Positions 1-15,047 of a stretch of DNA of 64,000 bases are shown one piece after another. The DNA lies in the IMG/VR virus record IMGVR_UViG_3300032236_001613, positions 62,001 through 126,000 of that record; one strand, given 5' to 3'. Position 1 is the first letter of the stretch. Each line of letters begins with the position of its first letter. The notes under the pieces were generated by a model, which was given only the letters and a program-made list of their open reading frames with translations, did no database searches and was not told the origin of the DNA. The translations under genes and the position numbers were made by a program.

Positions 1-132
1 AGTGATGTGATAACGCAAACCGCCCGAGGCAGTGCCATTGCCCGAAAGCATACGAGCTACAGCACGCACACTCTTGAACGTGCGGCGCTCGCCCGAAGGA
101 AAAGTAACGTCAATCTTGATTGCCTTGTTCAT
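1..132 (-). CDS. Partial small protein (runs off left edge); paralog of 10198..10398
   Basis: Manual translation MNKAIKIDVTFPSGERRTFKSVRAVARMLSGNGTASGGLR; GGAG RBS; shares AVARMLSGNGT.SGGLR with 10198..10398. Confidence 0.8.
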   Translation of the reverse strand, partial: MNKAIKIDVTFPSGERRTFKSVRAVARMLSGNGTASGGLRYHIT

Positions 133-239
133 GTCATTTGCTCCTGTTTGTGATGACATTTACTAACTCAACGCATGTAGTCTACAGTCTTTTATCCAAC
201 CTGTCAACTACTTTTTACCAACTTTCTTCAAACAATTTT

Positions 240-314
240 TGGTAGGACCGGAGAGATTCGAACTCTCGACCAACGGATTAAAAGTCCGCTGCTCTACCGC
301 TGAGCTACGATCCC
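240..314 (-). tRNA. tRNA-Lys(UUU)
   Basis: Reverse complement folds to a cloverleaf: acceptor GGGATCG/CGGTCCT, anticodon loop CTTTTAA, T-loop TTCGAAT, encoded CCA. Confidence 0.95.
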
Positions 315-336
315 ATTCGAAACTAGTGTATACTAC

Positions 337-504
337 TTAATAAGCGTCTGTAACCTCGCGGTCCGTACGCCAGTTGTAGCGCAATTCCCGCTCATGGTCC
401 TTGGCACTCTTGTGTGTACGAGGACGGTTAAATGTGTTAAGATTGCGGGCTACAGGATTGCTCTTGCGGCGCCGGTTCTTGTCCAAATAGTTGTGATCGT
501 TCAC
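337..504 (-). CDS. Small basic protein (55 aa, GTG start)
   Basis: Manual translation MNDHNYLDKNRRRKSNPVARNLNTFNRPRTHKSAKDHERELRYNW...; GGAG RBS. Confidence 0.6.
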   Translation of the reverse strand: MNDHNYLDKNRRRKSNPVARNLNTFNRPRTHKSAKDHERELRYNWRTDREVTDAY

Positions 505-641
505 TGTCTGCTCCTGGCAGCGTTTAGTGTCTATACAGTATACGCAGCCCGTGGGGTAAGGTCAACCACTCCCCAAGAAATATTTTTTTAAGCTTGAACT
601 AGGTCGTGGGGCAGGATCCCAAGATTTGGATCTCATGATTC

Positions 642-671
642 TTGACATCTTGTGGGGCAAAATCATATAAT
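642..671 (+). promoter_or_regulatory. Consensus sigma70-type promoter facing against the left-arm genes
   Basis: TTGACA (642-647), 18 nt, TATAAT (666-671). Confidence 0.65.
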
Positions 672-967
672 ATAGGCTGAAATTTGTGGCAAAAGTGCCA
701 CAAAATCGGAGGTTCTCTTGACCATTTCTTGAGATTTTGAGAGGAAAAGTTTAGAAAATTTTGGGCAAAATTGAGGTTGACCTCCTCGGGGATGAGAGGC
801 TATGCTAGAATACTTCTCTCACCTTTCGCCATCATTCTGGCCATTTTTTCGTCATTATTTCAGATGTTTTGGCCATTTTTTCTCATTGTTCTCATCAGAA
901 TTTCTACACACGGAGAGTGTGTATAGATTCAGAGTTTTATCGTTGTTAGTCGATGATGAGTCTACTG

Positions 968-1201
968 TTAATCAAAGTTACCAATGGATAGAGTCACGCT
1001 TGAACGGATTACGCGAGCCAAGAGTAGGATTGCAGCAGTATGTTGGATATCAAGCTGTTGAGTAGTCCAATGATAGTAGTTAACCACAGCCCAGTTCCAT
1101 AGTTGACTAACCAGTACAGCAGCGAATAGTACAGCTACGATTGTTAGAGCTGTGCGTAAGAACAGTTCGTTCCAGGAGGGTAGTTTGTTTGTGTCTAACA
1201 T
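968..1201 (-). CDS. Small membrane protein
   Basis: Hydrophobic segment; TAAGGA RBS; upstream -35/-10 at ~1238-1266. Confidence 0.65.
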   Translation of the reverse strand: MLDTNKLPSWNELFLRTALTIVAVLFAAVLVSQLWNWAVVNYYHWTTQQLDIQHTAAILLLARVIRSSVTLSIGNFD

Positions 1202-1330
1202 AGTGATCGGATCCTTATGTGTTAGTGTGTAGAGAGTATTGTACGAGGGTTAGTTGGAGATGTCAAGTGTTAGTAAAAAATCTGCGCGATACGCTAGTGC
1301 GTAGTATTCTACAGCGGGGTATTATGGTCG

Positions 1331-1603
1331 TTAGGCAAAAGTATGTATCCAACGCCAGTCGCTGTACTTAAGTAGCAATAGAGTGTATTCTGGTGGAGTG
1401 TGTATAGTTAGCAGTTCGATATCGCCTCTTTCTATTAGAGGAGCTGCCACTTTGTATTCGCGTCGTCCAGGAGGGAGTTCTTTAACACAGTAGTGGGCAA
1501 ATGTCAGTTGATGATAGCCGCCCACTTCCTGTATGTAACATAACAAGTGATCGATTTTAAAGTATCTAGGCCAATTAGTTGCGATCATCGCGAGATAGTG
1601 CAA
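1331..1603 (-). CDS. Hypothetical protein
   Basis: ORF in minus-strand run. Confidence 0.5.
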   Translation of the reverse strand: MHYLAMIATNWPRYFKIDHLLCYIQEVGGYHQLTFAHYCVKELPPGRREYKVAAPLIERGDIELLTIHTPPEYTLLLLKYSDWRWIHTFA

Positions 1604-1766
1604 ACAAGCGGTAGATATTGTAGACAGTAATCACTGCTGCTGCTGTAAAAATGATCTTCAGTAGGACTGCGCCCGCAGGTGGGTAGAGGTAAGCCACTAC
1701 GAAAACTGCAAAAATAGTAGCCAATAACAGGGCTGTCTTAGCAGCCGCAACCATATCGATATTCAT
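1575..1766 (-). CDS. Small two-TM membrane protein
   Basis: Two hydrophobic helices; AGGAG RBS. Confidence 0.7.
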   Translation of the reverse strand: MNIDMVAAAKTALLLATIFAVFVVAYLYPPAGAVLLKIIFTAAAVITVYNIYRLFALSRDDRN

Positions 1767-1820
1767 AATCTTCTGCTCCTTTTTAAAGTGTGTACATTAT
1801 ACTAGAGTTAGAGTCGGCTG

Positions 1821-2210
1821 TCAACGACGCTGCAGCAGCTCGGTCAAGCAGCGGGCCAAGTAGTAGTCTTCGTGCTCAATAGCACGTACAGCCAAACTTT
1901 TGACATTAGCCCAAAGATCGGGTTGACTGTCCTCTGCAGCGTAGTGTTCTTCGACCTGCACACCACGAGTCTTCAACTGCTCAATCAACTCTGGATAGGC
2001 TGCGTCGTTGCGAACATAAACACCCTGTTCGCTGTCGTAGACCTGCGTGTTGACTCTAAGCCGCACCGGGTCCAGAGTCTCAGTAACAGCTTTGGACTGC
2101 CGAAGATCCATGCTGGTCAACTCGCGAATGGCCTTAATCACCCGAACACGATAATCGCCCAGACTTTCTGCGGGCATGACGATGGTGATCTCTTTGGGCA
2201 AACGGATCAT
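1821..2210 (-). CDS. Ribosomal protein bL12 (L7/L12) C-terminal-domain-like protein
   Basis: RVRVIKAIRELTSMDLRQSKAVTE resembles bL12 CTD [24 protein letters not shown]; start moved to ATG 2210 (TAAGGAG RBS, promoter at 2238-2266). Confidence 0.65.
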   Translation of the reverse strand: MIRLPKEITIVMPAESLGDYRVRVIKAIRELTSMDLRQSKAVTETLDPVRLRVNTQVYDSEQGVYVRNDAAYPELIEQLKTRGVQVEEHYAAEDSQPDLWANVKSLAVRAIEHEDYYLARCLTELLQRR

Positions 2211-2269
2211 ATCTAGCTCCTTAGTTAGTAAGCCGTTATTATACTGGAGTTTTACCAGAATGTCAAATA

Positions 2270-2430
2270 GACCCGGGCTAACTCTAGACAATTACATTGC
2301 CGAAAGTTTGCTATCTTGTCCAACCCCCGGGCAGCTGGACTCAACAGGGTTATGTACTCATTTCGTAATGCAGAGCAGCGGCTACCAAAACCCTGCTAAC
2401 ACCTTGCCCGGCTCTGTTTTGTCATTACCC
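2270..2430 (-). ncRNA. Candidate structured ncRNA with pseudoknot
   Basis: ORF-free unit between two promoters; nested stems GTAATG/CATTAC and CAGAGC/GCTCTG; loop CAGGGTT can pair with downstream AACCCTG. Confidence 0.45.
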
Positions 2431-2458
2431 GTACATTATAGCAGGTTTTACCAGAATG

Positions 2459-3001
2459 TCAAGCCCGATCTACAGGTTGCCAAATACACTGATCCCAAGT
2501 GGATACTTTGATGTGGTCTTGACTGTCCGTATCGGATTGTGCTAGAAATAGCTCCTCGTATTCGGCCGGATTGTAGGCTATTAGATTGTCTACTTCCATG
2601 CCAAACGGAACGTCGCTTTCTTGATCCTGAAACACCCAACGTCCGGGTTCAATTTCACGCATAGCGAACCGTTCACGAGCTTCTTCGTCAAGTCCTACTA
2701 CACGTAGGCAATGACAGGGCTTGCCGTTTGTAGAGTTGTATAGTGCTTCACTAGTGATCACGTAATAATAGTTAGATCCACTATCTTCCATAGGCTTACG
2801 CTCGCGTACTCGATCGCCGACCTTAAATGGGCTAGGGATCTGTCTGTTCTTTCGAGCAGTAGCAGCCAATTCATCCATTTCTTTTATAAATTCCTTCAAC
2901 TTATCCGTATGCTCTTGTTCTTTTTTTGTAGACTTGATTAACTGGTTGATCAACCAGTATACGATTAATACTCCAATGATACATTGTACGATCATGACCA
3001 T
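2459..3001 (-). CDS. Membrane-anchored hypothetical protein
   Basis: N-terminal TM, FKVGDRVR motif, C-terminal WDQCIWQP shared with 12988..13353. Confidence 0.75.
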   Translation of the reverse strand: MVMIVQCIIGVLIVYWLINQLIKSTKKEQEHTDKLKEFIKEMDELAATARKNRQIPSPFKVGDRVRERKPMEDSGSNYYYVITSEALYNSTNGKPCHCLRVVGLDEEARERFAMREIEPGRWVFQDQESDVPFGMEVDNLIAYNPAEYEELFLAQSDTDSQDHIKVSTWDQCIWQPVDRA

Positions 3002-3004
3002 GGT

Positions 3005-3373
3005 TTATACTCCTCCAAACCAGCTAGTATACCAAGACTTTTTGGGTTTATACTGTTCTTGCTGTTTAGCTTCGCGTGCTATATACTCTTGTTCCTTATA
3101 GGCGGCCAGTTCTCGACGAGCGTCACGGCCATTTTCGATAGCTTGCTCCAAATCTCGTCGGTTTTGATATGCCCGATGATGTAGGTGATCAATTTCTTCG
3201 GCAGCTTCTCTTATTTGTCGTTTGTAGTCTGCTAACAAGGCAGCGGAACGTGCAGTTTCATCTTTAAGTTCTTGGATGTGCAGGCGCTGTAATTCCACAA
3301 TGGTGGTGCTATCTGCCAACATAGTGGCCAATTGGTCTTTGTCCAAATTAAGCAGATCGGGTTTGCTCAACAT
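3005..3373 (-). CDS. Coiled-coil protein
   Basis: Heptad-like helix, aromatic C-terminus KKSWYTSWFGGV; AGGAG RBS. Confidence 0.75.
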   Translation of the reverse strand: MLSKPDLLNLDKDQLATMLADSTTIVELQRLHIQELKDETARSAALLADYKRQIREAAEEIDHLHHRAYQNRRDLEQAIENGRDARRELAAYKEQEYIAREAKQQEQYKPKKSWYTSWFGGV

Positions 3374-3376
3374 TGT

Positions 3377-3574
3377 TTACTCCTTTTCTTTAAACTCGGG
3401 CATATGCTGAGACCAATCATATGTACCTACTTCATGATCCTCAGTCGGTTCTGGCAGTTGGAGTTTCAAAGCTTTGATCTCATCTTTAAGAGCACGGTTC
3501 TTGGCACGCAGGCCTGCTACAGTTTTCTCCAGCTGCTCACTGTACTCTTCGTAACTAAATTTGGGTCGAGACAT
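3377..3574 (-). CDS. Small coiled-coil protein
   Basis: RBS; directly downstream of promoter 3606-3634. Confidence 0.75.
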   Translation of the reverse strand: MSRPKFSYEEYSEQLEKTVAGLRAKNRALKDEIKALKLQLPEPTEDHEVGTYDWSQHMPEFKEKE

Positions 3575-3636
3575 TTCTGTTGCTCCTTACTGTCTAAGTG
3601 CGTATATTATACTAAGGTTTTACCGAAAGGTCAAGT

Positions 3637-3906
3637 CTATTTTTCAGTTTTGATTGCCTTAGCCACCATAGCTTCAATTTCTTTAACCACAGCAGCCAGT
3701 ATTGAACGGTAATATAATGATAGATTGTGTGCTATAACCCACACGATAGCCAATGTCCCGTAGAAGATCTTAGGTGGTTCGTGCCATAGTAAGGCACCTA
3801 GTGAGGTCCATGCAGCAATAGCGATAGCGAGCCGCTGTAGCAGCTCGCTTCGGCTAATGTTAGTAGTTACTCGAACTTCACTCACCATCAAACCCGCTTC
3901 ATGCAA
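3637..3906 (-). CDS. Small membrane protein
   Basis: Two hydrophobic segments; true start may be downstream of the annotated one. Confidence 0.55.
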   Translation of the reverse strand: MHEAGLMVSEVRVTTNISRSELLQRLAIAIAAWTSLGALLWHEPPKIFYGTLAIVWVIAHNLSLYYRSILAAVVKEIEAMVAKAIKTEK

Positions 3907-4727
3907 GTAATTTCAGCGAAGTTCGTCCAACTGTCCGGAAAGGCTACCTTCAAGTCTGCAATCTTAATCACAGCACGACATGACAGCTCCAACATACGCT
4001 CGCTATTATCATGAATGAAGTCAAGAATTGCTTTCTTTTCTTCTTCTTCGAAGCTGTACTTCTGCAGCATACCTGATTCAGTAACGTGACGCAGCCAGAT
4101 CAGCTTTTCACGATCGGTATCCATCTGTAGGTCAATGTAGTGGCAACGCGACTCAATCGCCTTCAAGTGGTTACGGAGTTTCTTAGAGCGCACGAAATCA
4201 AACTTCAAGTTGGTAATGAAGATTGCGCCACCCAAGAACTCAAAGCGATCTGGAATACCTTCACGTCGTAGCAAGCGACTGTCCTTGTTCCATGAAATGA
4301 AACGACGTTCGCTACTGTCAAGAGCGCCTTTAAGAGTGTTCAAGCTCTCTTCTTCTTCAAGTACAGTATCACAGTCGTCAAAGCCGATCACGTTCTTTTC
4401 TTCGCGGAACTCAAAGAGTTTAGCATATAGACCAATGCTAGATGCTGTACCTTTGACAATCTCATAGCGTGGCTTGCGACCGGCCAGTAGATTAAACAGA
4501 TCATCCTTAGCCAGGATTTCGCCTACGCCGTGGCTCTTGCCTACGCCAGCAGGACCTGATACAATAAGAGCACGAACGTGGCCTTGCTTAACGGCGCGGG
4601 TTACGTCGTGGAATACCTTAAAACGATTTTGCAAGCGGGTAAGAATCTGTGCATCAGTTTCTTTAGCAACAGACTTAGCAACGTCGGCAATACGATCCTG
4701 ATCCAATTCAATGGTGCTTTTGGTCAT
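3888..4727 (-). CDS. Phage P-loop (AAA-type) ATPase
   Basis: Walker A GPAGVGKS, Walker B IGFDDCD, sensor-like IFITN, ESRC arginine-finger region. Confidence 0.85.
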   Translation of the reverse strand: MTKSTIELDQDRIADVAKSVAKETDAQILTRLQNRFKVFHDVTRAVKQGHVRALIVSGPAGVGKSHGVGEILAKDDLFNLLAGRKPRYEIVKGTASSIGLYAKLFEFREEKNVIGFDDCDTVLEEEESLNTLKGALDSSERRFISWNKDSRLLRREGIPDRFEFLGGAIFITNLKFDFVRSKKLRNHLKAIESRCHYIDLQMDTDREKLIWLRHVTESGMLQKYSFEEEEKKAILDFIHDNSERMLELSCRAVIKIADLKVAFPDSWTNFAEITCMKRV

Positions 4728-4800
4728 TTAAGGTCCTTAAAAAGTAGAATTAATTACGCATCAACAGGTATATTATACTGCAAAGACCCTAATGGGTCAA

Positions 4801-5082
4801 TTAAGACTTAGTATCTTTGAGTACTCGTTTAATCATCTTCTGAAGCATTTGGTTGTTCGACTCGGAATCTTCTAGTTCGGCAGTCAAACGGGCGACCTGA
4901 GCAGTCAAACGCTCAACTTCGATCTTTTGGCGCTCTAGATCGTTCTGTAACTGCTGCTGTTGGGTTCGCGCATTCTGGGCGTCTAGTTTATATGCGTCAC
5001 GGCTTTTGATAGCTAGGGCTGCTAGCTCCATAAGCGGAGTGTCTGCAGTAGGTACAGGGTTATTGGCGGGTTCTAGTTTCAT
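4801..5082 (-). CDS. Coiled-coil protein
   Basis: Heptad pattern; AAGGA RBS; upstream promoter. Confidence 0.7.
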   Translation of the reverse strand: MKLEPANNPVPTADTPLMELAALAIKSRDAYKLDAQNARTQQQQLQNDLERQKIEVERLTAQVARLTAELEDSESNNQMLQKMIKRVLKDTKS

Positions 5083-5158
5083 AGTATGGACATCCTTCTA
5101 GTGTAGTAATTATCCAGGTAGATAACTATACACTAGAAGTTTTGGATAGTCAACCAGA

Positions 5159-5365
5159 TTATTCTGCAAATTCTTGCTCTTGGTAGTAAGCCAAGAGTTC
5201 GCGTTGAATAGTAGGAATCATCTCACCATCGCTTTCAATAGTAAAGCGGATAGGTGCATGACGCCAACTCTGTGTACGCTGGAACTCAGCGAACAGTTTT
5301 CGATGTCGAGCATTAGTTACATCAAACAATTCGTAAGGACGCATATGCAGATTCAATCGGCTCAT
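5159..5365 (-). CDS. Hypothetical protein
   Basis: AAGGAG RBS, compact operon spacing. Confidence 0.7.
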   Translation of the reverse strand: MSRLNLHMRPYELFDVTNARHRKLFAEFQRTQSWRHAPIRFTIESDGEMIPTIQRELLAYYQEQEFAE

Positions 5366-5380
5366 GGTCGTTCTCCTTAG

Positions 5381-5662
5381 TTAGGCTGCAACGGATTCGG
5401 ATTTCTTCTGTGTCTTAGTGCGCCGGGCTAGGCCGTCTTCAAGAGCTGCACGGACCTCAGCACGCCCATCATCAAAGTCAATGCTGATCAAGTATTCGAT
5501 AGCAGCGATCTTAGTCATGGGTTCGGGCAATTCGATCATATCAATGCAGTCATGATCAGTTTTGGCCAAAACCTTAACGCGAGCTGCATCGGTAGCAAAC
5601 CTGGTTTTGAACTGGCCTTTCAAACGGCTAACGCCGGCGTGTGTAAAAAGTTTATCAGTCAT
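5381..5662 (-). CDS. Hypothetical protein
   Basis: GAGGAG RBS; promoter ~5691-5720. Confidence 0.75.
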   Translation of the reverse strand: MTDKLFTHAGVSRLKGQFKTRFATDAARVKVLAKTDHDCIDMIELPEPMTKIAAIEYLISIDFDDGRAEVRAALEDGLARRTKTQKKSESVAA

Positions 5663-5726
5663 TTTGTCAACTCCTCTGTCTGTGTGCGTGTATTATACGA
5701 AACACAGACAGAGTTGTCAACCATTT

Positions 5727-6011
5727 TTAGTTCAAGCGTGGTGGTTCAGGATCGTATTCATCTTCGGTAGCGTACTGGTCTTCTGGATCGTAAGGCATAG
5801 TAGTCTCCTCTGTATCAGTGTCGTTATCAGTGTCAATCTCTTCCTCGTAGAATTCTCTAGCGGAATCGAGTTCGTCCTCAAAGTCGTCATCGCAGTAGTG
5901 CATAATATCGGCCAAAAGATCTGCAGGGCAAGTCCAAGTGGTGCCGTCGTTGCTAGCCAGCAGATCACGGATACGCTGCACAGCCTGTTGGTGTAGGGTC
6001 AAAGTAGTCAT
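5727..6011 (-). CDS. Acidic hypothetical protein
   Basis: Start moved to ATG 6011 (AAGGAG RBS); D/E-rich tail. Confidence 0.7.
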   Translation of the reverse strand: MTTLTLHQQAVQRIRDLLASNDGTTWTCPADLLADIMHYCDDDFEDELDSAREFYEEEIDTDNDTDTEETTMPYDPEDQYATEDEYDPEPPRLN

Positions 6012-6067
6012 TGTCCGTGCTCCTTTTGTTAAGTGTATATTATACAATCAACTAGGTATTGAGTCAA

Positions 6068-6424
6068 CTATTCGTCATTGTCGCATATTTCGCAAGGTTC
6101 CCAAGGTAATGCTCCGTGTGTGCAAGGTTTAGGGTCAGATTTCTTGGGAAGTGGAAGGTTCTTTAAAGGAGTAGTGCTGAATTCAGCAGATCGAACTACT
6201 CTTTTTAGTTCGTTGTCCCGAACTCTTTTATGAATGGGCTTTTCTTTTGCTGGGGTATCTCTTTCTGGAGGTTTTGAGTTCCTCAGTGTTTGTATCAAAC
6301 TATCTGTGTGAGCTACAGCAGATTGTGCTATCTTTATAGGATCCAATTTTTCGTTTGCTATGTTAGCCAACATTCCTTGCATGGCCATAGCCGCGATTTG
6401 CTCTCGTTTAGTTAAGTGCTTCAT
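6068..6424 (-). CDS. Hypothetical protein
   Basis: LTKRE.IAAMAMQG.LA motif common in small phage proteins; C-terminal CxH..CxxC. Confidence 0.7.
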   Translation of the reverse strand: MKHLTKREQIAAMAMQGMLANIANEKLDPIKIAQSAVAHTDSLIQTLRNSKPPERDTPAKEKPIHKRVRDNELKRVVRSAEFSTTPLKNLPLPKKSDPKPCTHGALPWEPCEICDNDE

Positions 6425-6471
6425 CTCTATATACCTTTGATGATACAGTATACAGAGATTCTAACCTATTG

Positions 6472-6672
6472 TCAATCGGGTTTTTTGAGCCAAAACTCCG
6501 CATCGTGTGCTATGCATTCTAGTGTGCCTGCGCCCGGGTAGTGGCGTAGAATGTGCATAGCACGTTCGCGCAAGTGTCGAGGGACTCTGGGTGTGGCTTT
6601 TGGGTTTAAGAGTTCTACTAAGAAGCGTTCTGCTGCTAGTAGAGCGCGATATCGTTCATCGGGTAGGGTCAT
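6472..6672 (-). CDS. Small conserved phage protein (BPSL0761-like)
   Basis: MTLPDERYRAL...PRVPRHLRERA..ILRHYP pattern recalled from that family. Confidence 0.6.
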   Translation of the reverse strand: MTLPDERYRALLAAERFLVELLNPKATPRVPRHLRERAMHILRHYPGAGTLECIAHDAEFWLKKPD

Positions 6673-6675
6673 TTA

Positions 6676-7305
6676 TTAATCCTCTGTATCAAGTCCGGAT
6701 AATTCTCTCATTCGTCTTGTATTAAAAAATGCAATCATTTCACCTAATTTAGCAGGCAAAGATTCGGACAAGACAAATCTATAGTTTTTGAAAGATACTT
6801 CGTTTCCAAAATATTGATTCATTTCGTCTGCATTTTTAAATGTAACGCGACTCTGTCCAGGACTGTGTATATCATAGACAGAAACATAATGTCCTTGATT
6901 GAATAATCTTTTCCAAATAGCAAACCCTTCATCACTTAACTGGTCGTCGCTGATAATGCATACTGGATAGTGAGTATCTTTGAGTACAGCATTATACAAG
7001 TTACTAGCGTAAGGAGGATGCCCGCTGTAATTAGGATCTTTGCCTACTACGTTTACCAAAAGGTTTTGTGGTTTTTTGGAAAATTCTATAGCTAGAAATA
7101 TATGTGTTTCTGTACCATACCAGTAGTAAATTGTACTTTCTAATTCAATTTTGAACAAGTCTTTAGATAACTTTTTTGGGTGTATTCCAGAAGATAATAG
7201 TTCTTTCACGTTTTGAGAAATTATAGGGTACATATCGCCTATATTATTTCTTTTGGGCATCTCTGTCAACCATGACTGGTTGAAATCAGTTCTACTCGTA
7301 GTCAT
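6676..7305 (-). CDS. AT-rich hypothetical protein, possibly virion-associated
   Basis: 209-aa ORF, markedly AT-richer than neighbours; N-terminal ..WLTE. Confidence 0.75.
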   Translation of the reverse strand: MTTSRTDFNQSWLTEMPKRNNIGDMYPIISQNVKELLSSGIHPKKLSKDLFKIELESTIYYWYGTETHIFLAIEFSKKPQNLLVNVVGKDPNYSGHPPYASNLYNAVLKDTHYPVCIISDDQLSDEGFAIWKRLFNQGHYVSVYDIHSPGQSRVTFKNADEMNQYFGNEVSFKNYRFVLSESLPAKLGEMIAFFNTRRMRELSGLDTED

Positions 7306-7308
7306 TCT

Positions 7309-7491
7309 TCAGCCCAAATCCGTTTTATAGCGAATGTGTACAGCAAAATCATAGGCTGCTTCAGGAGTCAAGCCTTTGGCTACAGCCCACCCAAGAGTCA
7401 AACTAAACCAATCTTGTGAACTGTCTGTATCGATTTCTGATGCTCTATCAGAGCATTCGGTTTTGAACAGTTCGATCAATTGTTCGTTCAT
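7309..7491 (-). CDS. Hypothetical protein (MNE- start family)
   Basis: Stop/start overlap with neighbours. Confidence 0.7.
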   Translation of the reverse strand: MNEQLIELFKTECSDRASEIDTDSSQDWFSLTLGWAVAKGLTPEAAYDFAVHIRYKTDLG

Positions 7492-7697
7492 TATTCAACT
7501 CCGAAATGATGCTTCAAAATACTACCACGGCTAACAAATGGATGATCAGCATCCTTGTCCATAATATAAGCACATTCCTTGACAATCAACTGGGCGAAAT
7601 TTTTAATAAAAACTTCTTCCAAACTGTTGGCAAAATCAAATCCTGGCAGAGGTTTATATCCAGCCTGTTCAGCAAGTTCTCTAATTCGCTCGTTCAT
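7491..7697 (-). CDS. MNERI-family small protein
   Basis: MNERIRELAEQAG..FAQLIVKEC..KHHFGVE. Confidence 0.8.
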   Translation of the reverse strand: MNERIRELAEQAGYKPLPGFDFANSLEEVFIKNFAQLIVKECAYIMDKDADHPFVSRGSILKHHFGVE

Positions 7698-7975
7698 TCT
7701 TCAATTCCGAAATGTTTTAGGATCTCGTCTCGAAGTTCACCGTTGCGAAATTCGGTAGCAAAGTCGTCCACCAAATGCACATAAAGATACTGCATAGCCT
7801 GTTCGGATTTGGGCAGTTTCAGAAATTTCTTGATACGCCGCCGTTCTTCTTTACTATATTCCTTAAGGTGATCCTTATGCACATAAAAGCCATCTGGGTC
7901 GTAATAGTCAAATTCAAATTCCGTGGCAAGATTGTGACAGCGACTTTCCATGCTTTCAACAATATATTCGTTCAT
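7694..7975 (-). CDS. Small protein sharing MNE..HFG.E ends with its neighbours
   Basis: Starts MNEY, ends LKHFGIEE; ATGA overlaps. Confidence 0.75.
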   Translation of the reverse strand: MNEYIVESMESRCHNLATEFEFDYYDPDGFYVHKDHLKEYSKEERRRIKKFLKLPKSEQAMQYLYVHLVDDFATEFRNGELRDEILKHFGIEE

Positions 7976-8178
7976 TCTTTAACTCCAAAATAACGCTTCA
8001 AACGAACAGGATACTCACTTGCGGGAAAACGATGGTCGACAAAATCCTGTATAGTCTTAGCACATTCCATAACAATCAACTCTGCGAACTTTTCAATAGC
8101 CTCTTGATCCCAAGCATCAGGAGTACCGTCGCAATACAAACCTGCTTCCTCAGCGAGAGTGTGAATACGTTCGTTCAT
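7972..8178 (-). CDS. MNERI-family small protein
   Basis: MNERIHTLAEEAG..FAELIVMEC..RYFGVKE. Confidence 0.8.
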   Translation of the reverse strand: MNERIHTLAEEAGLYCDGTPDAWDQEAIEKFAELIVMECAKTIQDFVDHRFPASEYPVRLKRYFGVKE

Positions 8179-8390
8179 TATTCAAAGACCTTAACAACTT
8201 CTTTATGCACCCGCTTGTCTGTCTGTAGGTATTCAACCCAGTTTTCAGCATCTGCGAGGTCGTGAAATTTACCATCTCGCTTAGTAGGATGCCAGATGTT
8301 AATCCAAAACAAGCCTAAACACTTGCTCTGTATCGCATACTGTGGGCGTCCGTAGTAGGCGCCGCTATGCTTAACAATACGGTATTTCAT
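8178..8390 (-). CDS. Hypothetical protein
   Basis: MKYRIV..Y.IQ.K.L.FW pattern; coupled overlaps. Confidence 0.7.
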   Translation of the reverse strand: MKYRIVKHSGAYYGRPQYAIQSKCLGLFWINIWHPTKRDGKFHDLADAENWVEYLQTDKRVHKEVVKVFE

Positions 8391-8632
8391 GCTTCACCTT
8401 CTACTAATGACAAGTTGTATTCACGAATTATAGGCTTTTCATTATTGATAGAGCAAGGATCTTCCATCACGATAAGACGTGTGTCGTCGATAACATAGAT
8501 AACAGTTGGATCTTCTAGCCCTTCAAGAAAAACCCGATGCATCATAGCGTGTTTACTAACGCCCCACCAAGTAGGGTAATCGATCTTTTCCCAATCCAAC
8601 GAAAAAAGAAACAGGATAGGTGGTGCTTTCAT
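8387..8632 (-). CDS. Hypothetical protein
   Basis: ATGA overlaps on both sides. Confidence 0.65.
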   Translation of the reverse strand: MKAPPILFLFSLDWEKIDYPTWWGVSKHAMMHRVFLEGLEDPTVIYVIDDTRLIVMEDPCSINNEKPIIREYNLSLVEGEA

Positions 8633-8976
8633 TCTTCAAACCTTTTCCAAAATTGCTGGTATGCCTCGAACTCTTTAGAAAATGCAGCATCCTTAGCCTT
8701 TTTTTCTTTTGCCAATCGTGCCTTATTAGCCTTGTTTTCTTTCGCTACCCGTGCCTTATATTCGCGGTCATTTTCTTCGCGTCGTTCATAGACGTTGATT
8801 GTATACTGACCAGGAACCTCTTCTGTTTCTTCGTGACGGAAGAAAAGTTCTCGGTTCTTATGAGTCTCCATAAGATCCTGAAGATTCTGGATAACCTGCA
8901 TAGGAGTTTTATTATGAAAGGTATGATACACGTATGCGTTACGAACCCAGCTTTCAATAATTTTACGGTCACTCAC
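8629..8976 (-). CDS. Hypothetical protein
   Basis: First gene after promoter 9006-9033; GTG start with AGGAG RBS. Confidence 0.7.
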   Translation of the reverse strand: MSDRKIIESWVRNAYVYHTFHNKTPMQVIQNLQDLMETHKNRELFFRHEETEEVPGQYTINVYERREENDREYKARVAKENKANKARLAKEKKAKDAAFSKEFEAYQQFWKRFEE

Positions 8977-9029
8977 GGGTCTACTCCTTCTGTTTACATG
9001 CTAACAGTATAGCAGGTTTTACCAAAAAG

Positions 9030-9395
9030 TCAACCTGTAGGATTGTTGGATAGGCAATGCGGGCAGGGCATTACGTCTGTATTCGGCACCAAAATAATCC
9101 CAGCTCCGCCACATTCTGGGCAGGGATCTGAACCCCGCGCACGGATGGCTTTGAAAATTGCCATTTCGGCATCCCACACGGCAACCTCTTCAGCGTTTCC
9201 TTGGTTGCCGCAATCACAACGCTCGCAACTGCACGGACGCTTGTATTTAGGTTCGGCTAACTTCTCACACGCCTCGCGCTCATGGGCAGCGACAAGGTTG
9301 GCAAAGAGTTCAAAAGAGTCCCGTCCTTTAGACGAAAACATATAAAGATCAAACCCTGACTCTTCTACCAGTCTTAGGATGTCATCGCGGGTCAT
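9030..9395 (-). CDS. MTRDDI-type protein with Cys-rich zinc-binding motifs
   Basis: FANLVAAHEREAC motif; CSCERCDC, CPECGGAG, CPHC. Confidence 0.75.
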   Translation of the reverse strand: MTRDDILRLVEESGFDLYMFSSKGRDSFELFANLVAAHEREACEKLAEPKYKRPCSCERCDCGNQGNAEEVAVWDAEMAIFKAIRARGSDPCPECGGAGIILVPNTDVMPCPHCLSNNPTG

Positions 9396-9610
9396 CCGAA
9401 TGATCTCCTTGCATCATGTTCGTTGTCAAACATCTTGCAGCCCCAGTAAGTGAGAGCCTGTGCGTTGAAATAGCCAGGCTCACCCTTAGCCTTGTTCCAT
9501 GCTGCACAGGCTTCTGCAAAACTCTCTGCCTCGTACAGTCCACAAAATTCTGCACCGGAAGAATTACCCGTTGCAGCGTAACCTTCCATCCAGACTTCAT
9601 ATTGTTTCAT
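9392..9610 (-). CDS. Hypothetical protein
   Basis: YEVWMEGYAATG..YWGC pattern; overlap coupling. Confidence 0.7.
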   Translation of the reverse strand: MKQYEVWMEGYAATGNSSGAEFCGLYEAESFAEACAAWNKAKGEPGYFNAQALTYWGCKMFDNEHDARRSFG

Positions 9611-9622
9611 TGGTATCTACTT

Positions 9623-9796
9623 TTAAACGTAGCCCAACCACTGAGCTCCCCAACCTAGTGCACCGATTGCACACAATACGCTACCTAGGCCCAACAAAAT
9701 TCTAGCCCAGATGGGCAATATCTTGAATGCAATAGCTTCATAGCCCAAAGACACAAATAAGAACAAATAACAAATAGCTACAATTAACGGTTTCAT
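9623..9796 (-). CDS. Small membrane protein (57 aa)
   Basis: Manual translation MKPLIVAICYLFLFVSLGYEAIAFKILPIWARILLGLGSVLCAIGALGWGAQWLGYV; AGGAG RBS. Confidence 0.7.
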   Translation of the reverse strand: MKPLIVAICYLFLFVSLGYEAIAFKILPIWARILLGLGSVLCAIGALGWGAQWLGYV

Positions 9797-9839
9797 CTTT
9801 CTGCTCCTTTCAATGTAGAAGTATTATAGCAGATCGAGA

Positions 9840-10145
9840 TTAAGAGAACAACCTCTTATACCAGGGCTGTTCATCATTGACAACTTGTGGTTGTGTATTA
9901 AGAGTGGCGGCGTGCAACTCTCTATTTTGATAGCGCAACCCTTGATTCTCACGAGTGATGTCTAACAAATCATCTCGGCAAGATGCTAGGAGAGTTTCAA
10001 GCTCTTGGTTAAGAGCCTTCAAACGTTCGATAATAGTGCGTTGGCTAACGAACATGGCTTCGTAGTCAGCTAAACGCTGCTCTGCAGTAGGCTGTGTCTT
10101 TTCCAGCTCTTCTTTTTTACGCTGTTCGAATGTAGGTGCTGCCAT
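9840..10145 (-). CDS. Coiled-coil protein
   Basis: Heptads; C-terminus PWYKRLFS; AGGAG RBS. Confidence 0.75.
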   Translation of the reverse strand: MAAPTFEQRKKEELEKTQPTAEQRLADYEAMFVSQRTIIERLKALNQELETLLASCRDDLLDITRENQGLRYQNRELHAATLNTQPQVVNDEQPWYKRLFS

Positions 10146-10156
10146 TTCATGCTCCT

Positions 10157-10187
10157 AAAAAAAATGGGCAGTTTAATGACCTGCCCA
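10157..10187 (-). terminator. Rho-independent terminator
   Basis: TGGGCAG/CTGCCCA stem followed by an 8-T run on the minus strand. Confidence 0.8.
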
Positions 10188-10197
10188 GGTCGGTTAA

Positions 10198-10398
10198 TCA
10201 TCCGGCTACAGCATTGTTCCGGACAATCGACTCGGCTTCGTTACCATAAAGCCCATTAGCAGCCTTGATGGAGATCTGCTCACGCAAACCACCCGACTCA
10301 GTGCCGTTGCCCGAAAGCATACGAGCCACTGCATGGATGCTGTGGAAGCGACGGATAACGCCCGACGGATGGGTAACAAAAATTCGACGATTAGTCAT
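10198..10398 (-). CDS. Small putative DNA-binding protein; paralog of 1..132
   Basis: RRFHSIHAVARMLSGNGTESGGLR; AAGGAG RBS. Confidence 0.75.
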   Translation of the reverse strand: MTNRRIFVTHPSGVIRRFHSIHAVARMLSGNGTESGGLREQISIKAANGLYGNEAESIVRNNAVAG

Positions 10399-10477
10399 TT
10401 CAAACTCCTTGTGTATCTAAAAGGTTTAATCTAACTCAACAGAACTATTATAGCAAAACTCTCAATCTAAGTCAACC

Positions 10478-10759
10478 TCAAACCTTAATAACGCCATGGT
10501 TATAACGAGTCTCCAGTACATCGTAAAACTCGTCAACAGCAGCAAAAAACCGGCAATGACGCGGGCTAGCCAAACGTCCTGCAGCCTTAGCACGCCCATA
10601 GGCCCGATTGAAGTTATCGTGCTCGCTACAAATAGCAACCGCATAATCGATACCTTCGGGCTTTTCAATAAAGGCCACAGTGGCTCCACCACGGCTTTCA
10701 ATCTTTCCGTCCAGATCACGGTTACGATAGTGAATGTACTTGATCTTAGGTGTATTCAT
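10478..10759 (-). CDS. Conserved phage protein
   Basis: GGATVA..YAVAICSEHDNFNRAYGRAKA.GRL pattern; RBS and promoter. Confidence 0.75.
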   Translation of the reverse strand: MNTPKIKYIHYRNRDLDGKIESRGGATVAFIEKPEGIDYAVAICSEHDNFNRAYGRAKAAGRLASPRHCRFFAAVDEFYDVLETRYNHGVIKV

Positions 10760-10815
10760 CTGTCCATCTCCTTTCTGTTTGTGTCTAAGTATTATACTAT
10801 GGTTTTACCAAAAGG

Positions 10816-11355
10816 TCAAGTAATTTTTCTCGAAACAATAAAAGTATCATCTGCACAGTTATATAGCAATGATTCCTTAATTTGTTTCGATACGTTAAAA
10901 GTTTTCGGCATCTCGAACTCATCACTTCCTTGATTATTTTTAGCTCGTGCACCCGTATAACGAGTTTGAGATATTATATTCTTTAGATCATATCCTTTAG
11001 ACTTTGCATATTCTTTAATTTGTCGCTTTAACCACCTAATACCGGCGGTTCCTATGTCTACCCCATTATATTGAGTTCCTAAACTAGTATGAACAATTTT
11101 ATTGTTACTGGGATGGTCAACTGGTGCTATATTTCCAATGTCAATGGATCCATTTTTAGAAAGTGAGAATGACGCAATTACCAATGGTCTATTGCTAGAC
11201 TTTTCAATCACTTTGGCATAATAGTGCCCTGGTATATCCTTAACTTGTTCGAAAGTAATAGATAGCTCTTGTTCTGGATTCTTATACGATTCTAGTATCA
11301 ATATTGAATTAATGTTGATAAAAAAGAATTTGCTTTCTATTTCATGTAGTCTCAT
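10816..11355 (-). CDS. AT-rich late-type protein with capsid-targeting-like N-terminus
   Basis: MRLHEIE start; TAAATA box at 11374-11379; AT-rich. Confidence 0.7.
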   Translation of the reverse strand: MRLHEIESKFFFININSILILESYKNPEQELSITFEQVKDIPGHYYAKVIEKSSNRPLVIASFSLSKNGSIDIGNIAPVDHPSNNKIVHTSLGTQYNGVDIGTAGIRWLKRQIKEYAKSKGYDLKNIISQTRYTGARAKNNQGSDEFEMPKTFNVSKQIKESLLYNCADDTFIVSRKIT

Positions 11356-11384
11356 TCCTACGACCTTTTGCTATATTTAACTCC

Positions 11385-12029
11385 TTAGTGTGCATAGTAG
11401 CTAGTGTTCTGTACGCTGTCGTCCCAGCAGGCGCGGCAGTTACCGCACTCATTGTCTTGAAAGCGGCTAGGGCAATCGTAGCCGTGTGCAGCACCATTCT
11501 TATGCACGGTTGAGGTATGCTCAAAGCCCTTAGGCGGCTCTGCGTCCATTTGCTGGGCACTCATACGGATTACAAGATTGCGTGGACGGCTGCGAAGTCG
11601 AAGGAACTCGCGCACCATACCAAACTCACGGGTAGGCAACCAATGCTCAACCCAAGGAGTCTGCTCTGCTACTTCGGCAATCATCTGCAAGTGATCTACA
11701 CTCTGCAGGTCGCCGCTATCGTGCCAACGGAAGTGTGTTTCACCTTTCAGTAGGCGCACCATAGCAGCAATCCAAGTGTCGCGAGTAACAGTATTGAGCA
11801 GAGCTTCTGCCAAACGAGCATGACGACGGTTGTGTGCTGCCTTAGTGTTGGGTAGTGAATACATTCCGCGCATAGCGTAACACTGGTGGCAGGTGCTGCC
11901 TTCTACTTGGCGCAGGATGCTACCAGTTTGGCAACGGGTAGCACTAAGCCCAAAGCTCTTGCCCGGCATTTTGCTAGGATTGCTGAGTCCACCAACAAAC
12001 TCTGCTGCCTCTGCTTTGGTCCTAAACAT
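11385..12029 (-). CDS. Gp88-like phage protein (Cys-rich)
   Basis: LSNPSKMPG.SF.L.A..C..G..L, C..CYA, FRWHDSGDL, HWLPTRE, C..C..CW; start moved to ATG 12029. Confidence 0.75.
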   Translation of the reverse strand: MFRTKAEAAEFVGGLSNPSKMPGKSFGLSATRCQTGSILRQVEGSTCHQCYAMRGMYSLPNTKAAHNRRHARLAEALLNTVTRDTWIAAMVRLLKGETHFRWHDSGDLQSVDHLQMIAEVAEQTPWVEHWLPTREFGMVREFLRLRSRPRNLVIRMSAQQMDAEPPKGFEHTSTVHKNGAAHGYDCPSRFQDNECGNCRACWDDSVQNTSYYAH

Positions 12030-12083
12030 AGCCAACTCCTTACTGTTACTGTAGGAATAGTATACTATGGTTTTACCAAAAGG

Positions 12084-12527
12084 TCAAGCCAATTCTTTCT
12101 TCTTGGCTCGGACTCGGGCTGTTCCCTTCTTAGTATGACGCACCATGCGAGCGTAACGATGCTGCCCCATCAAGATTTGGATACGACCTTCAAACCCGTC
12201 CTTAATAGGAACGCTCCCAGTTTCAATTTTGAAGTTGTTCTTGTCAAACCACTGAAGCCACTCGTAAAGTTCGGCTTCGGCTTCCTCACCGCGGCTCAAT
12301 ACTGCCACGCAGGGATGCTTATGATAGGCGTTCTCCGGACACCAAACGACGCCATTCTTATCTGCTCGTTTGTAGTCCTCGTCGTACCATGCATAGTCTG
12401 GATAATTACCGTCGACTACAATGCCCACGCAATGCCGCCCGATGCCTACTTCGCCTTCGAGATCCAGTTGACAGTTATTCTTAGCAGCCCAAACCGCCAT
12501 CCAAGTAATCTTTTCATCGCGTGTCAT
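12084..12527 (-). CDS. Hypothetical protein
   Basis: Own promoter and AGGAG RBS. Confidence 0.75.
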   Translation of the reverse strand: MTRDEKITWMAVWAAKNNCQLDLEGEVGIGRHCVGIVVDGNYPDYAWYDEDYKRADKNGVVWCPENAYHKHPCVAVLSRGEEAEAELYEWLQWFDKNNFKIETGSVPIKDGFEGRIQILMGQHRYARMVRHTKKGTARVRAKKKELA

Positions 12528-12581
12528 TGTATTACTCCTTGCTCTAACTATGAGTATATTATAACAGGTTTTACCAAATGG

Positions 12582-12923
12582 TCAAACACAATCTGAGACA
12601 AATTCTGTGTCAGGTGCAACCAGCGTTTCTACAAACCAAGTACCGCCTGTGCCCTGAGTATGCTCTTGTGCGTAGTCTTCTGCAGACTCTACGCTAGGAA
12701 ACGGGCCCGCAAAGTTAAATCCCTTGACAGGATCTCCATGTACTACAACAAGATCCACATTATCATCTTGTCCATCAACATTGGGCGTCCGCATCATGAC
12801 TACAAACCATGCAGCGGCTGTGCAGTACTCCCCGCCATAGTCGTAGGCTGCTTCTTCTTGATCAAAAGGCCCGATAAACTCGAAGCCGCTAGAAAGGTCA
12901 CCAAATAATATAACAAACTGCAT
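12582..12923 (-). CDS. Protein with internal duplication
   Basis: Two copies of V...GD...GF.F.GPF...E.A.DY..E...  WFV. Confidence 0.8.
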   Translation of the reverse strand: MQFVILFGDLSSGFEFIGPFDQEEAAYDYGGEYCTAAAWFVVMMRTPNVDGQDDNVDLVVVHGDPVKGFNFAGPFPSVESAEDYAQEHTQGTGGTWFVETLVAPDTEFVSDCV

Positions 12924-12987
12924 AGACAGTCTCCTTTTGCTATGAGTATATTATAACAGGTTTTACCAAAAAGTCAAGACCTGTGTT

Positions 12988-13353
12988 CTAAAGAGTCAAA
13001 CCTTCGACACCATTTTTCCGAGGTTGCCAGATACACTGGCTCCACTGAACTAGTTCTCGGTCATTCCTGTCATCGTAGGGTTCTAACCATGCCACAGGCA
13101 CCGCGTAAGACATAGGCCTGCCACTATGAGTGGAAGTTCCCCGATCAATCTGCCTACCGTCGGCCAGCACAGCAGTGAGGTCGTGCACGTCACAGGTGAT
13201 GCGTTGCCCGCCTGTTGTCTCTACAGTGGCGTGCCTGGCAGGTGCTCGCACCACAGCGTATTGCAGTTCATCGGGCGGTGGCGTGCCCTGCTGGTCAATC
13301 TGAATCACACGGACCCGTTGTCCAACTTTAAATCCCGTACTCATATTAAACAT
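12988..13353 (-). CDS. Hypothetical protein (FKVGQRV / WSQCIWQP)
   Basis: Own promoter and RBS; motifs shared with 2459..3001. Confidence 0.7.
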   Translation of the reverse strand: MFNMSTGFKVGQRVRVIQIDQQGTPPPDELQYAVVRAPARHATVETTGGQRITCDVHDLTAVLADGRQIDRGTSTHSGRPMSYAVPVAWLEPYDDRNDRELVQWSQCIWQPRKNGVEGLTL

Positions 13354-13405
13354 TTTCTCCTTGCTAGTGTCTGTGTATTATAGCAGGTTTTACCAAGAAG
13401 TCAAG

Positions 13406-13640
13406 TGCTTCTCTCTGCTGGCGGTGTTTGTCATCTCACCACAAACAATTATGTGGTATCCGCATCCCAACACAGAGAGACTTTCGTGTGCCAACGCCCG
13501 TTAGGTTAGACGGCAGTATTGCTACTGGAGACCATTGACAGTCATTCTCGCGAATGATATGTTGTTCTCAAACCACCCGTGGTTGTCACACCACTTCATC
13601 ATGCGGGTCACATTAGTGGCTGACTAAGCCACGTGGTCTT
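13406..13640 (-). ncRNA. Candidate multi-hairpin structured ncRNA
   Basis: ORF-free; GNRA-capped stems TCATTC-GCGA-GAATGA and CAGTA-GCAA-TACTG; 8-bp TCTCTCTG/CAGAGAGA enclosing a 7-bp stem. Confidence 0.6.
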
Positions 13641-13643
13641 TAA

Positions 13644-13928: not shown

Positions 13929-14002
13929 ATTAATTGCTCCTTACAAAAAAGTGTTTAAACTCTAACTCAACAGAACTATTATACTAAACTTTTACCAAAA
14001 GG

Positions 14003-14164: not shown

Positions 14165-14173
14165 GTCTGCTCC

Positions 14174-14844: not shown

Positions 14845-14845
14845 A

Positions 14846-15046: not shown

Positions 15047-15047
15047 A

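What the first reader, a model, noticed from the sequence alone, without database searches (positions are those of the whole stretch)
2270..2430. ORF-free promoter cassette encoding a pseudoknotted RNA
Seen: a full early promoter (2435-2462) is followed by ~165 nt with no ORF before the next promoter. The predicted 5' end starts nested stems (2423-2428/2365-2370 and 2411-2416/2371-2376). The enclosed loop (2389-2395) is complementary to 2345-2351, giving a pseudoknot, and another 7-bp stem follows (2334-2340/2318-2324). Inference: a small ribozyme, riboswitch-like RNA or anti-defence decoy RNA.
Basis: partly seen in the sequence, partly recalled or inferred. Interest (0 to 1): 0.6.

Follow-up and report, generated by a model that had tools for sequence, protein, structure and literature searches.

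The report
Non-coding module between two phage promoters
In a 328-kb freshwater jumbo phage, one of the many promoter-headed early gene slots holds 165 bases of moderately structured non-coding sequence instead of a gene; close relatives carry ordinary genes or nothing at the same place, and nothing supports a ribozyme, riboswitch or decoy.

Summary
A perfect sigma-70-type promoter (2435-2462, - strand) is followed by 164 nt with no usable ORF, then by a near-identical promoter (2238-2266) that heads a 129-aa gene. Of the 16 promoters of this motif in the 328-kb genome, only this one lacks an SD and ORF within 50 nt.

The structural case is weak:
- Stems of 6-7 bp are at chance level.
- Two of the four stems have about zero probability in the folding ensemble.
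- The fold z-score (-2.6) is matched by 4% of local windows.
- Rfam and ARAGORN find nothing there.

The 164 nt occur only in three near-identical haplotypes of this phage. There are no paralogues and no remote homologues, by BLAST, covariance model and exact-word scans. No pair shows compensatory change.

In relatives with 84-97% identical flanks the slot holds a 132-aa gene, a 146-aa gene, or is absent with its neighbours. Every breakpoint lies at the promoters.

Best reading: a lineage-restricted non-coding module in a promoter-delimited, recombination-shuffled early region (PeSL-like). It is read from P1 as a structured leader running into the next gene. A dedicated small RNA is not excluded, because substitutions are few and mostly unpaired. 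Ribozyme, riboswitch and decoy are unsupported.

The parts
2435..2462 (-). Promoter P1: TTGACA, 16 nt, TATAAT with an extended -10 TG. The predicted transcription start is near 2428.
   Evidence: It is identical in haplotypes L093 and L103. The start site is inferred from spacing and not measured.
2267..2430 (-). Non-coding module, 164 nt, 50% G+C. It has no SD or start-codon ORF, and no terminator before P2.
2406..2415 (-). 5' arm of the closing helix. It pairs with 2269-2278 and is built on the near-palindromic GCCGGGC / GCCCGGG motifs.
   Evidence: MFE and RNAalifold consensus. The pairs are invariant in the 3 haplotypes, so they are uninformative.
2367..2403 (-). Hairpin A of the consensus fold.
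   Evidence: The only change in it (G2379 to U in L093) falls on an unpaired bulge.
2348..2366 (-). Single-stranded linker and variation hot spot. L093 has two 1-nt insertions and one substitution here, and L103 has one substitution.
2311..2347 (-).
   Evidence: In L093 one G-U becomes A-U and one C-G becomes a C/A mismatch.
2280..2308 (-). Hairpin D. It is kept in the MFE of both the window and L093.
   Evidence: The L103 change G2295 to A lies in its loop.
2269..2278 (-). 3' arm of the closing helix, containing a CCCGGG site.
2238..2266 (-). Promoter P2, heading the 129-aa gene. Its -35 end (2266) is where homology to every relative lacking the module resumes.
1821..2210 (-). Downstream gene of 129 aa with a strong SD. 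It has a sub-threshold resemblance to the ribosomal L7/L12 C-terminal domain.
   Evidence: 24.6 bits against a cut-off of 25.9
2459..3001 (-). Upstream gene of 180 aa, an ORFan. Its TGA stop lies inside the -35 hexamer of P1.
2176..2511 (+). Antisense open frame of 111 aa, called as 83 aa by gene finders. Judged spurious.
   Evidence: It is split by a +2 frameshift in L093. Besides its own near-identical copy, the only hits among 1.84 billion representatives are two weak partial matches (E 4e-5 and 6e-4) to much longer proteins. No Pfam or PHROG hit. No match in related genomes.

Best explanation
The 164 nt are the content of one exchangeable slot in the phage's hyperplastic early region.

That region is a tandem series of small modules. 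Each module is a near-identical strong sigma-70-type promoter, a short leader with SD, and a small ORFan gene. Recombination between the repeated promoter sequences inserts, deletes and swaps modules between co-circulating phages (shown by comparison).

In this lineage the slot between the 180-aa and 129-aa genes carries a non-coding filler instead of a gene. Its 5' end still looks like a standard leader with a degraded SD (ACAAAACAGAG...CAAGGTG). A 47-codon frame without a start codon runs to the next promoter. It may therefore be the wreck of a former small gene or a recombination by-product (inferred).

Host RNA polymerase should transcribe it early from P1. There is no terminator, so the transcript runs through P2 into the 129-aa gene. 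The module thus acts as a long, moderately structured 5' leader rather than a discrete catalytic or ligand-sensing RNA (inferred).
For: 1. It is the only one of 16 motif promoters without SD and ORF.
2. No terminator-like site lies between 2200 and 2470.
3. Relatives with 84-90% identical flanks have a 132-aa ORF between the same two promoters. Homology is lost just after P1's -10 (about 2432) and resumes at the first base of P2's -35.
4. Other close relatives join the promoter at 3634 directly to P2, so the whole block 3605..2267 is absent. Others carry a 146-aa gene.
5. Contigs from other lake metagenomes diverge at 2266 and at 2433/2435, and a further one at 2228 just downstream of P2.
6. 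The module is found only in three haplotypes that are 94-100% identical in the flanks. There is no paralogue or remote homologue by BLAST, tblastx or covariance model, in the phage's own genome, in related jumbo-phage genomes (five searched by BLAST, four by the covariance model) or in 96 related loci. Five exact-word scans of IMG/VR and JGI contigs also found nothing.
7. The fold is only in the top 4-5% of the local background. There is no compensatory pair, and one change breaks the most stable hairpin.
8. The leader-like 5' end and the start-less 47-codon frame are visible.
Against: The module has been kept in three diverged haplotypes, and with few changes. Against L093 it shows 4 substitutions in 164 nt, while third codon positions of the neighbouring 180-aa gene show 21 in 181 (Fisher p=0.001). 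Once a hyperdivergent patch is excluded, p is only 0.16.

Six of the 8 mutational events fall in unpaired parts of the consensus fold (binomial p=0.05).

Structure is strand-specific: z = -2.6 against -0.8. G+C is 50% in a 37% G+C genome.

No intact homologue of a supposed former gene exists. No RNA data are available.
Confidence: 0.5

Rival explanations
1. It is a genuine lineage-specific small structured RNA, made early from its own consensus promoter. It would act in trans, as an sRNA regulator, protein sponge or anti-defence decoy, or in cis as a regulatory leader. Its ends would be defined by processing rather than by a terminator.
For: It has a dedicated 12/12 promoter with an extended -10. 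The fold is strand-specific, z = -2.59, and persists in the longer read-through transcript. There are fewer substitutions than at neighbouring third codon positions, and most fall in loops or the linker. G+C is 50%. Both possible protein frames are broken in L093.
Against: There is no Rfam match and no homologue beyond near-identical strains. Sister lineages dispense with it. No terminator is present. Four percent of local windows fold as well. No compensatory change was found, and one substitution disrupts hairpin C and changes the MFE architecture in L093. No mimicry or repeat feature was found.
Confidence: 0.3
2. The specific reading of the first reader: an H-type pseudoknotted ribozyme or riboswitch formed by stems 2423-2428/2365-2370, 2411-2416/2371-2376 and 2389-2395/2345-2351.
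For: All the complementarities are exact and are retained in the three haplotypes.
Against: The retained pairs never vary, so they carry no information. Stems 1 and 2 have probability 0.00, and enforcing them costs about 9.6 kcal/mol before any pseudoknot gain. Six-bp stems are expected about 6.5 times by chance in this sequence. The L093 insertion bulges stem 1. No ribozyme or riboswitch family matches at E<=10. P2 sits between the element and the next gene, so it could only gate read-through from P1.
Confidence: 0.04
3. It encodes a protein after all. Candidates are the 83/111-aa antisense frame (2176..2511, +) or a micropeptide on the - strand (the 30-aa TTG frame 2344..2252, or peptides of 9-12 aa).
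For: The + frame is open for 111 codons and gene finders call it. L093 and L103 each have GGAG-like changes 11-12 nt upstream of the TTG at 2344.
Against: Two 1-nt insertions in L093 shift both the + frame and the 47-codon - frame. All three substitutions inside the 30-aa frame are non-synonymous (worked by hand). The + frame runs against all early transcription, and its ATG and SD are by-products of the reverse complement of the promoter. There is no Pfam, PHROG or protein-library family.
Confidence: 0.05
4. It is a DNA-level element, such as binding sites for an early phage or host protein. It would be built on three copies of the palindromic GCC(C)GGG motif at about 2406-2412, 2325-2332 and 2272-2279.
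For: Two of the genome's 11 CCCGGG sites lie 54 nt apart here, with a third near-copy. Palindromes by themselves generate much of the predicted RNA pairing.
Against: CCCGGG is neither avoided nor enriched genome-wide (11 observed, 13.5 expected). The region is locally G+C-rich. No partner protein or analogous array was found elsewhere in the genome.
Confidence: 0.06

Closest known systems
PeSL (promoter-early stem-loop) cassettes and modular shuffling in T4-type phages (Arbiol et al. 2010, PMC2839356; Comeau et al. 2014, PMC4122927)
   Same: Many copies of a strong sigma-70-like early promoter motif sit in a hyperplastic region of small ORFan genes. Insertions, deletions and replacements between close relatives have their endpoints in the repeated motifs (abstract read).
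   Different: No conserved stem-loop terminator accompanies the promoter. Upstream flanks are unrelated, and terminator-like sites occur at chance level (10 found against 9.6 expected). The phage is an uncultivated 328-kb freshwater jumbo phage that was not shown to be T4-type. The module in question carries no gene. Mini-circles were not tested.
Stable non-coding RNAs encoded by phages, such as T4 species 1 and 2 (RNA C and D) in the tRNA cluster, and sRNAs seen in dRNA-seq or ONT-cappable-seq maps of Pseudomonas phages (PMC8244752, PMC10914365; T4 from my own knowledge)
   Same: Structured, non-coding sequence of about 120-170 nt under early transcription, with no assigned function.
   Different: Those RNAs were detected as discrete transcripts, and the T4 ones are conserved across relatives. 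Here there are no RNA data, no defined 3' end and no conservation beyond one lineage.
RNA decoys of phage defence: CRISPR-repeat mimics (Racr) and pseudo-ToxI antitoxin repeats (from my own knowledge)
   Different: Those elements are recognised by sequence or structure mimicry of a host repeat, often in tandem copies. No tandem or direct repeat family and no Rfam match were found here. The host is unknown, so mimicry could not be tested.
Phage morons (promoter-bounded accessory inserts between conserved genes; from my own knowledge)
   Same: An independently promoted insert between two genes that are adjacent in relatives.
   Different: Morons are defined by a protein-coding gene and usually by their own terminator. 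Both are absent here.

Membership tests
Any Rfam ribozyme, riboswitch, leader or sRNA family | A covariance-model match at or above the family's gathering score | tested here: not met
   The whole window at gathering thresholds gives only 2 tRNAs and a group I intron, all elsewhere. The interval 2100-2600 at E<=10 gives only a 14.6-bit chance hit on the other strand, outside the interval.
tRNA / tmRNA | Cloverleaf or tmRNA detected by ARAGORN or Rfam | tested here: not met
   ARAGORN finds only tRNA-Lys (240-314) and tRNA-Met (22131-22208).
Conserved structured RNA (generic) | Compensatory base-pair changes among homologues | tested here: inconclusive
Only 3 haplotypes exist. One change is G-U to A-U and one breaks a pair.
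Conserved structured RNA (generic) | Folding energy well below shuffled and local background | tested here: inconclusive
   z = -2.59 with 3 of 200 shuffles as good, but 4% of 171 local windows are as low.
   The complementarity is present. Nested stems 1 and 2 have probability 0.00, and the loop helix 0.18 as a competing nested helix. ViennaRNA cannot score pseudoknots.
PeSL modular-shuffling cassette | A repeated strong sigma-70-like early promoter motif in a hyperplastic region | tested here: met
   The window has 17 copies against 0.06 expected. Genome-wide there are 16, all within window 2266-18045 on the - strand.
PeSL modular-shuffling cassette | A stem-loop terminator as part of the repeated motif | tested here: not met
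   The sequence upstream of the -35 is not conserved. Terminator-like sites number 10 against 9.6 in shuffles, with none next to these promoters.
PeSL modular-shuffling cassette | Indel and replacement endpoints between close relatives fall in the motifs | tested here: met
   Homology breaks just after the -10 of P1 (about 2432) and at 2266 (the -35 of P2) in L089-L092 and L104-L113, and in metagenome contigs.
Protein-coding early module | SD plus start codon within about 50 nt of the -10, and a frame preserved in relatives | tested here: not met
   There is no SD or start. Both long frames are shifted in L093, and no homologues exist.
Independent sRNA gene | Own promoter and own intrinsic terminator or processed 3' end | tested here: inconclusive
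   A promoter is present but there is no intrinsic terminator. Processing cannot be tested, because no RNA run holds the phage.

The most novel reading that the evidence does not exclude
A freshwater jumbo phage lineage has swapped a small early gene for a strongly transcribed structured RNA of about 165 nt. The fold would be a closing helix plus three hairpins with a free variable linker. The RNA would be cut out of the early read-through transcript and act in trans on the host, for example as a decoy or sponge against a defence or RNA-binding factor. That would make it an RNA 'moron' carried by promoter-mediated module exchange.
Probability: 0.15. Interest if true: 0.6.

Novelty: new variant of a known kind. 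Interest (0 to 1): 0.28.

Why it matters
The practical message is a caution. In phage early regions built from repeated promoter modules, a gene-less module with some predicted stems is not in itself evidence of a ribozyme or riboswitch.

The locus does give a very clean natural example of promoter-to-promoter module exchange outside the T4-type phages. At least four alternative contents of one slot co-circulate in lakes, and every junction lies at the promoters.

If the non-coding module proved to be a processed, functional RNA, it would show that such shuffling also spreads RNA genes. That would be of moderate interest for phage-host RNA biology.

Tried and rejected
- **Rfam and ARAGORN.** Rfam at gathering and at E<=10, and ARAGORN, find nothing in the interval.
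- **Phage GenBank collection.** blastn of 1800-3000 gave no match.
- **Neighbouring proteins in IMG/VR.** The search for related loci with the 129-aa and 180-aa proteins found nothing.
- **Similarity searches.** BLAST and tblastx of the module against the phage's own genome and 80 related loci matched only the promoters.
- **Related genomes.** BLAST in 5 related jumbo-phage records, and a covariance model in the phage's own genome, 4 related records and 96 loci, hit only the module itself and its two haplotypes.
- **Exact-word scans.** Three words in IMG/VR gave 0 hits (and the pattern). Two words in JGI metagenome contigs gave 0 hits and 5 hits; the 5 share only the 20-mer and are chance matches.
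- **Deletion remnant of the relatives' 132-aa gene.** Rejected: there is no similarity at either end or inside.
- **Antisense 111-aa ORF as a gene.** Rejected.
- **47-codon - strand frame as a decayed gene with living homologues.** None found.
- **L10/L12-type leader for the L7/L12-like downstream gene.** There is no Rfam leader hit, homologues of that gene in other phages lack the element, and the Pfam hit is itself below threshold.
- **Occlusion of the downstream SD by the module in the read-through transcript.** Not seen.
- **RNA evidence.** No RNA run holds the phage, and the four DNA runs laid were contigs only.

No alternative genetic code was used.

Full report
**Context**

The window is bases 62001-126000 of a 328,068-bp IMG/VR virus record, about 92% complete. 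The record is held by freshwater and lake metagenomes from several studies.

Window 1-19000 is an early-type region read on the - strand. It is a tandem series of small ORFs, each preceded by a near-identical promoter, and it is richer in G+C (about 45%) than the 37% G+C genome.

The motif TTGACnTTtTGGTAAAAC...TATAAT occurs 17 times in the window with 3 or fewer mismatches, all on the - strand, against 0.06 expected. A stricter genome-wide scan finds 16 copies, all between window 2266 and 18045.

**Check of the observation**

P1 (2462..2435) is a 12/12 sigma-70-type promoter with a 16-nt spacer and a TG extended -10. P2 (2266..2238) is also 12/12, and its first 18 bases are identical to those of P1.

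In 15 of the 16 motif promoters an SD and an ORF of 46-216 codons start 21-49 nt after the -10. After P1 there is nothing until the 129-aa gene behind P2, 224 nt away. The - strand of 2267-2430 carries stops in all frames. Its only start-codon frame of 20 aa or more is a 30-aa TTG frame with no SD. 'ORF-free promoter cassette' is therefore correct, and it is unique in this genome.

I reject it as a gene for four reasons:
- Two 1-nt insertions in haplotype L093 split it.
- It opposes all early transcription.
- Its ATG and GGAG are simply the reverse complement of the promoter.
- HMMER against 1.84 billion representatives returns its own near-identical copy plus only two weak partial hits to much longer proteins, and Pfam, PHROGs and related genomes give nothing.

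**Is the structure more than chance?**

- The - strand folds at -58.3 kcal/mol, z = -2.59, with 3 of 200 shuffles as good. The + strand gives z = -0.82.
- Among 171 same-size - strand windows across the early region, mean z is -0.49 and 4% reach -2.59.
- Helices of 6 bp or more with at most one G-U number 11, against 6.5 +/- 2.4 in shuffles; 6% of shuffles have as many.
- The MFE and the three-haplotype RNAalifold consensus agree on a different architecture:
  - a closing helix, 2415-2406 with 2278-2269
  - hairpin A, 2403-2367
  - a 19-nt open linker
  - hairpin C, 2347-2311
  - hairpin D, 2308-2280
Forcing stems 1 and 2 costs about 9.6 kcal/mol.
- Part of the pairing comes from three copies of the palindromic GCC(C)GGG motif. 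Two of the genome's 11 CCCGGG sites lie here.
- Rfam finds nothing at gathering scores or at E<=10, and ARAGORN finds nothing.

**Relatives**

The neighbouring 279-aa gene (phrog_1250) has 272 relatives in IMG/VR. None of the 80 loci fetched holds the module, by BLAST, tblastx or covariance model. Related full-length jumbo-phage records also lack it: five searched by BLAST and four by the covariance model. The phage's own genome has no second copy. Exact-word scans of IMG/VR and JGI metagenome contigs gave nothing beyond five chance 20-mers.

Through the flanking proteins I recovered close relatives from assemblies. Three haplotypes carry the module:
- The window type (L094 and L095 are 100% identical).
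- L093, about 94% identical in the flanks. The module has 4 substitutions and two 1-nt insertions.
- L103, 97.3% identical in the flanks. The module has 2 substitutions.

All other close relatives lack it:
- L089-L092 and L104 have a 132-aa ORFan with a normal leader and SD between the same two promoters.
- L106-L111 join the promoter at 3634 directly to P2, so the 65-, 122- and 180-aa genes and the module are all missing.
- L112 and L113 have a 146-aa gene.

In every case homology to the window resumes at base 2266, the first T of P2's -35. On the other side it ends just after P1's -10 or within the promoter and leader at 3634-3582.

Contigs from other runs also run on into unrelated sequence at 2266 and at 2433/2435, and one at 2228 just downstream of P2. 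One such loose end reads as a standard leader with SD, which indicates yet another gene behind P1.

This is the signature of recombination between repeated promoter motifs. It was described for PeSL cassettes of T4-type phages (PMC2839356, read; PMC4122927). Here, however, there is no conserved stem-loop terminator.

**What the few variants say**

There are eight mutational events in the module. Six lie in unpaired parts of the consensus fold: four in the linker 2356-2366, one in a bulge of hairpin A and one in the loop of hairpin D. One turns a G-U into A-U. One turns a central C-G of hairpin C into a C/A mismatch and changes L093's MFE architecture. Two of 8 events in the 60% of bases that are paired gives binomial p=0.05.

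No pair changes on both sides.

Against L093 the module has 2.4% substitutions, while third codon positions of the 180-aa gene show 11.6% (p=0.001). That gene contains a hyperdivergent patch at 2485-2570. Without it the contrast is 2.4% against 5.9% (p=0.16). Against L103 the module is no different from its flanks.

This is a hint of constraint and no more. Mosaicism is an equally good explanation.

**Origin**

The first 30 nt after P1 resemble the standard leader of the other modules (compare ...ACAAACAGAAAGGAG... at 10819 and 9033), with an inserted GCCGGGC and an SD degraded to AAGGTG.

A stop-to-stop frame of 47 codons (2395..2255) follows. It has no start codon and ends at the TAA in P2's spacer. 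This fits the wreck of a former small gene. However, the frame is not beyond chance, it is frameshifted in L093, and no homologue exists among 5.8 billion clustered proteins. Nor is the module a deletion derivative of the relatives' 132-aa gene.

**Mechanism, with shown and inferred steps**

Shown:
- The slot is promoter-bounded, exchangeable and dispensable in sister lineages.
- Its content here is non-coding.
- There is no intrinsic terminator before P2.
- The core fold persists in the longer P1 read-through transcript and does not engage the downstream SD.

Inferred:
- Host sigma-70 polymerase fires P1 early.
- The transcript runs through P2 into the 129-aa gene, so the module serves as a structured 5' leader or filler.

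I put 0.5 on this. The other readings are:
- a genuine processed small RNA with a trans or cis role: 0.3
- a hidden peptide: about 0.05
- a DNA-level palindrome array: about 0.06

No RNA data exist for this phage, so expression itself is unverified.

**Verdict**

The element is best filed as a gene-less module of a PeSL-like promoter-shuffled early region. That makes it a new variant of a known kind of genome architecture, not a new RNA class. Interest is modest, at 0.28. The clean population-level picture of module exchange is the more solid and reusable result.

Noticed in passing
window 5085-5150 (- strand): A long, near-perfect hairpin (about 19 bp inner stem) overlaps the promoter-like site 5153..5125 between two small early genes. 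The 164-nt window around it has z = -5.3 to -5.8, by far the most structured stretch of the early region. It could be an operator-like palindrome or an RNA processing or termination signal.
   Followed up: partly
window 19308-19493 (- strand): Rfam group I catalytic intron match (64.3 bits, above the gathering score) at the boundary between the early region and the next gene block. The host gene and any homing endonuclease were not examined.
   Followed up: no
window 240-314 and 22131-22208 (- strand): tRNA-Lys(UUU) and tRNA-Met(CAU) genes. The tRNA-Lys lies in the early - strand region.
   Followed up: no
window 2459-2462; L092 1211-1213: The upstream genes (the 180-aa gene here, the 132-aa gene in relatives) use the TGA inside the -35 hexamer TTGACA of the next promoter as their stop codon. 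Gene ends and promoter recombination sites are therefore fused.
   Followed up: partly
window 1821-2210 (- strand): The 129-aa early gene has a sub-threshold match to the ribosomal protein L7/L12 C-terminal domain (PF00542, 24.6 bits against a cut-off of 25.9, residues 15-47). A 35%-identical homologue sits in another 326-kb jumbo phage (L023 7262-7627) behind a different gene.
   Followed up: partly
window 2485-2570: A patch of about 25% divergence between the window and haplotype L093 (also seen in runs X3 and X4) at the 3' end of the 180-aa gene, within flanks that are otherwise 94-97% identical. This looks like a small recombinant tract from a more distant lineage.
   Followed up: partly
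window 46101-63050 (+ strand): Three consecutive giant ORFs of 1807, 2445 and 1361 aa. They were not analysed.
   Followed up: no
window 3582-3634 and 2238-2266; L106-L111: In six close relatives the 279-aa and 89-aa genes are followed directly by the 129-aa gene. The whole 1.3-kb block of three ORFans plus the non-coding module (3605..2267) is an insertion or deletion bounded by two copies of the promoter motif.
   Followed up: yes
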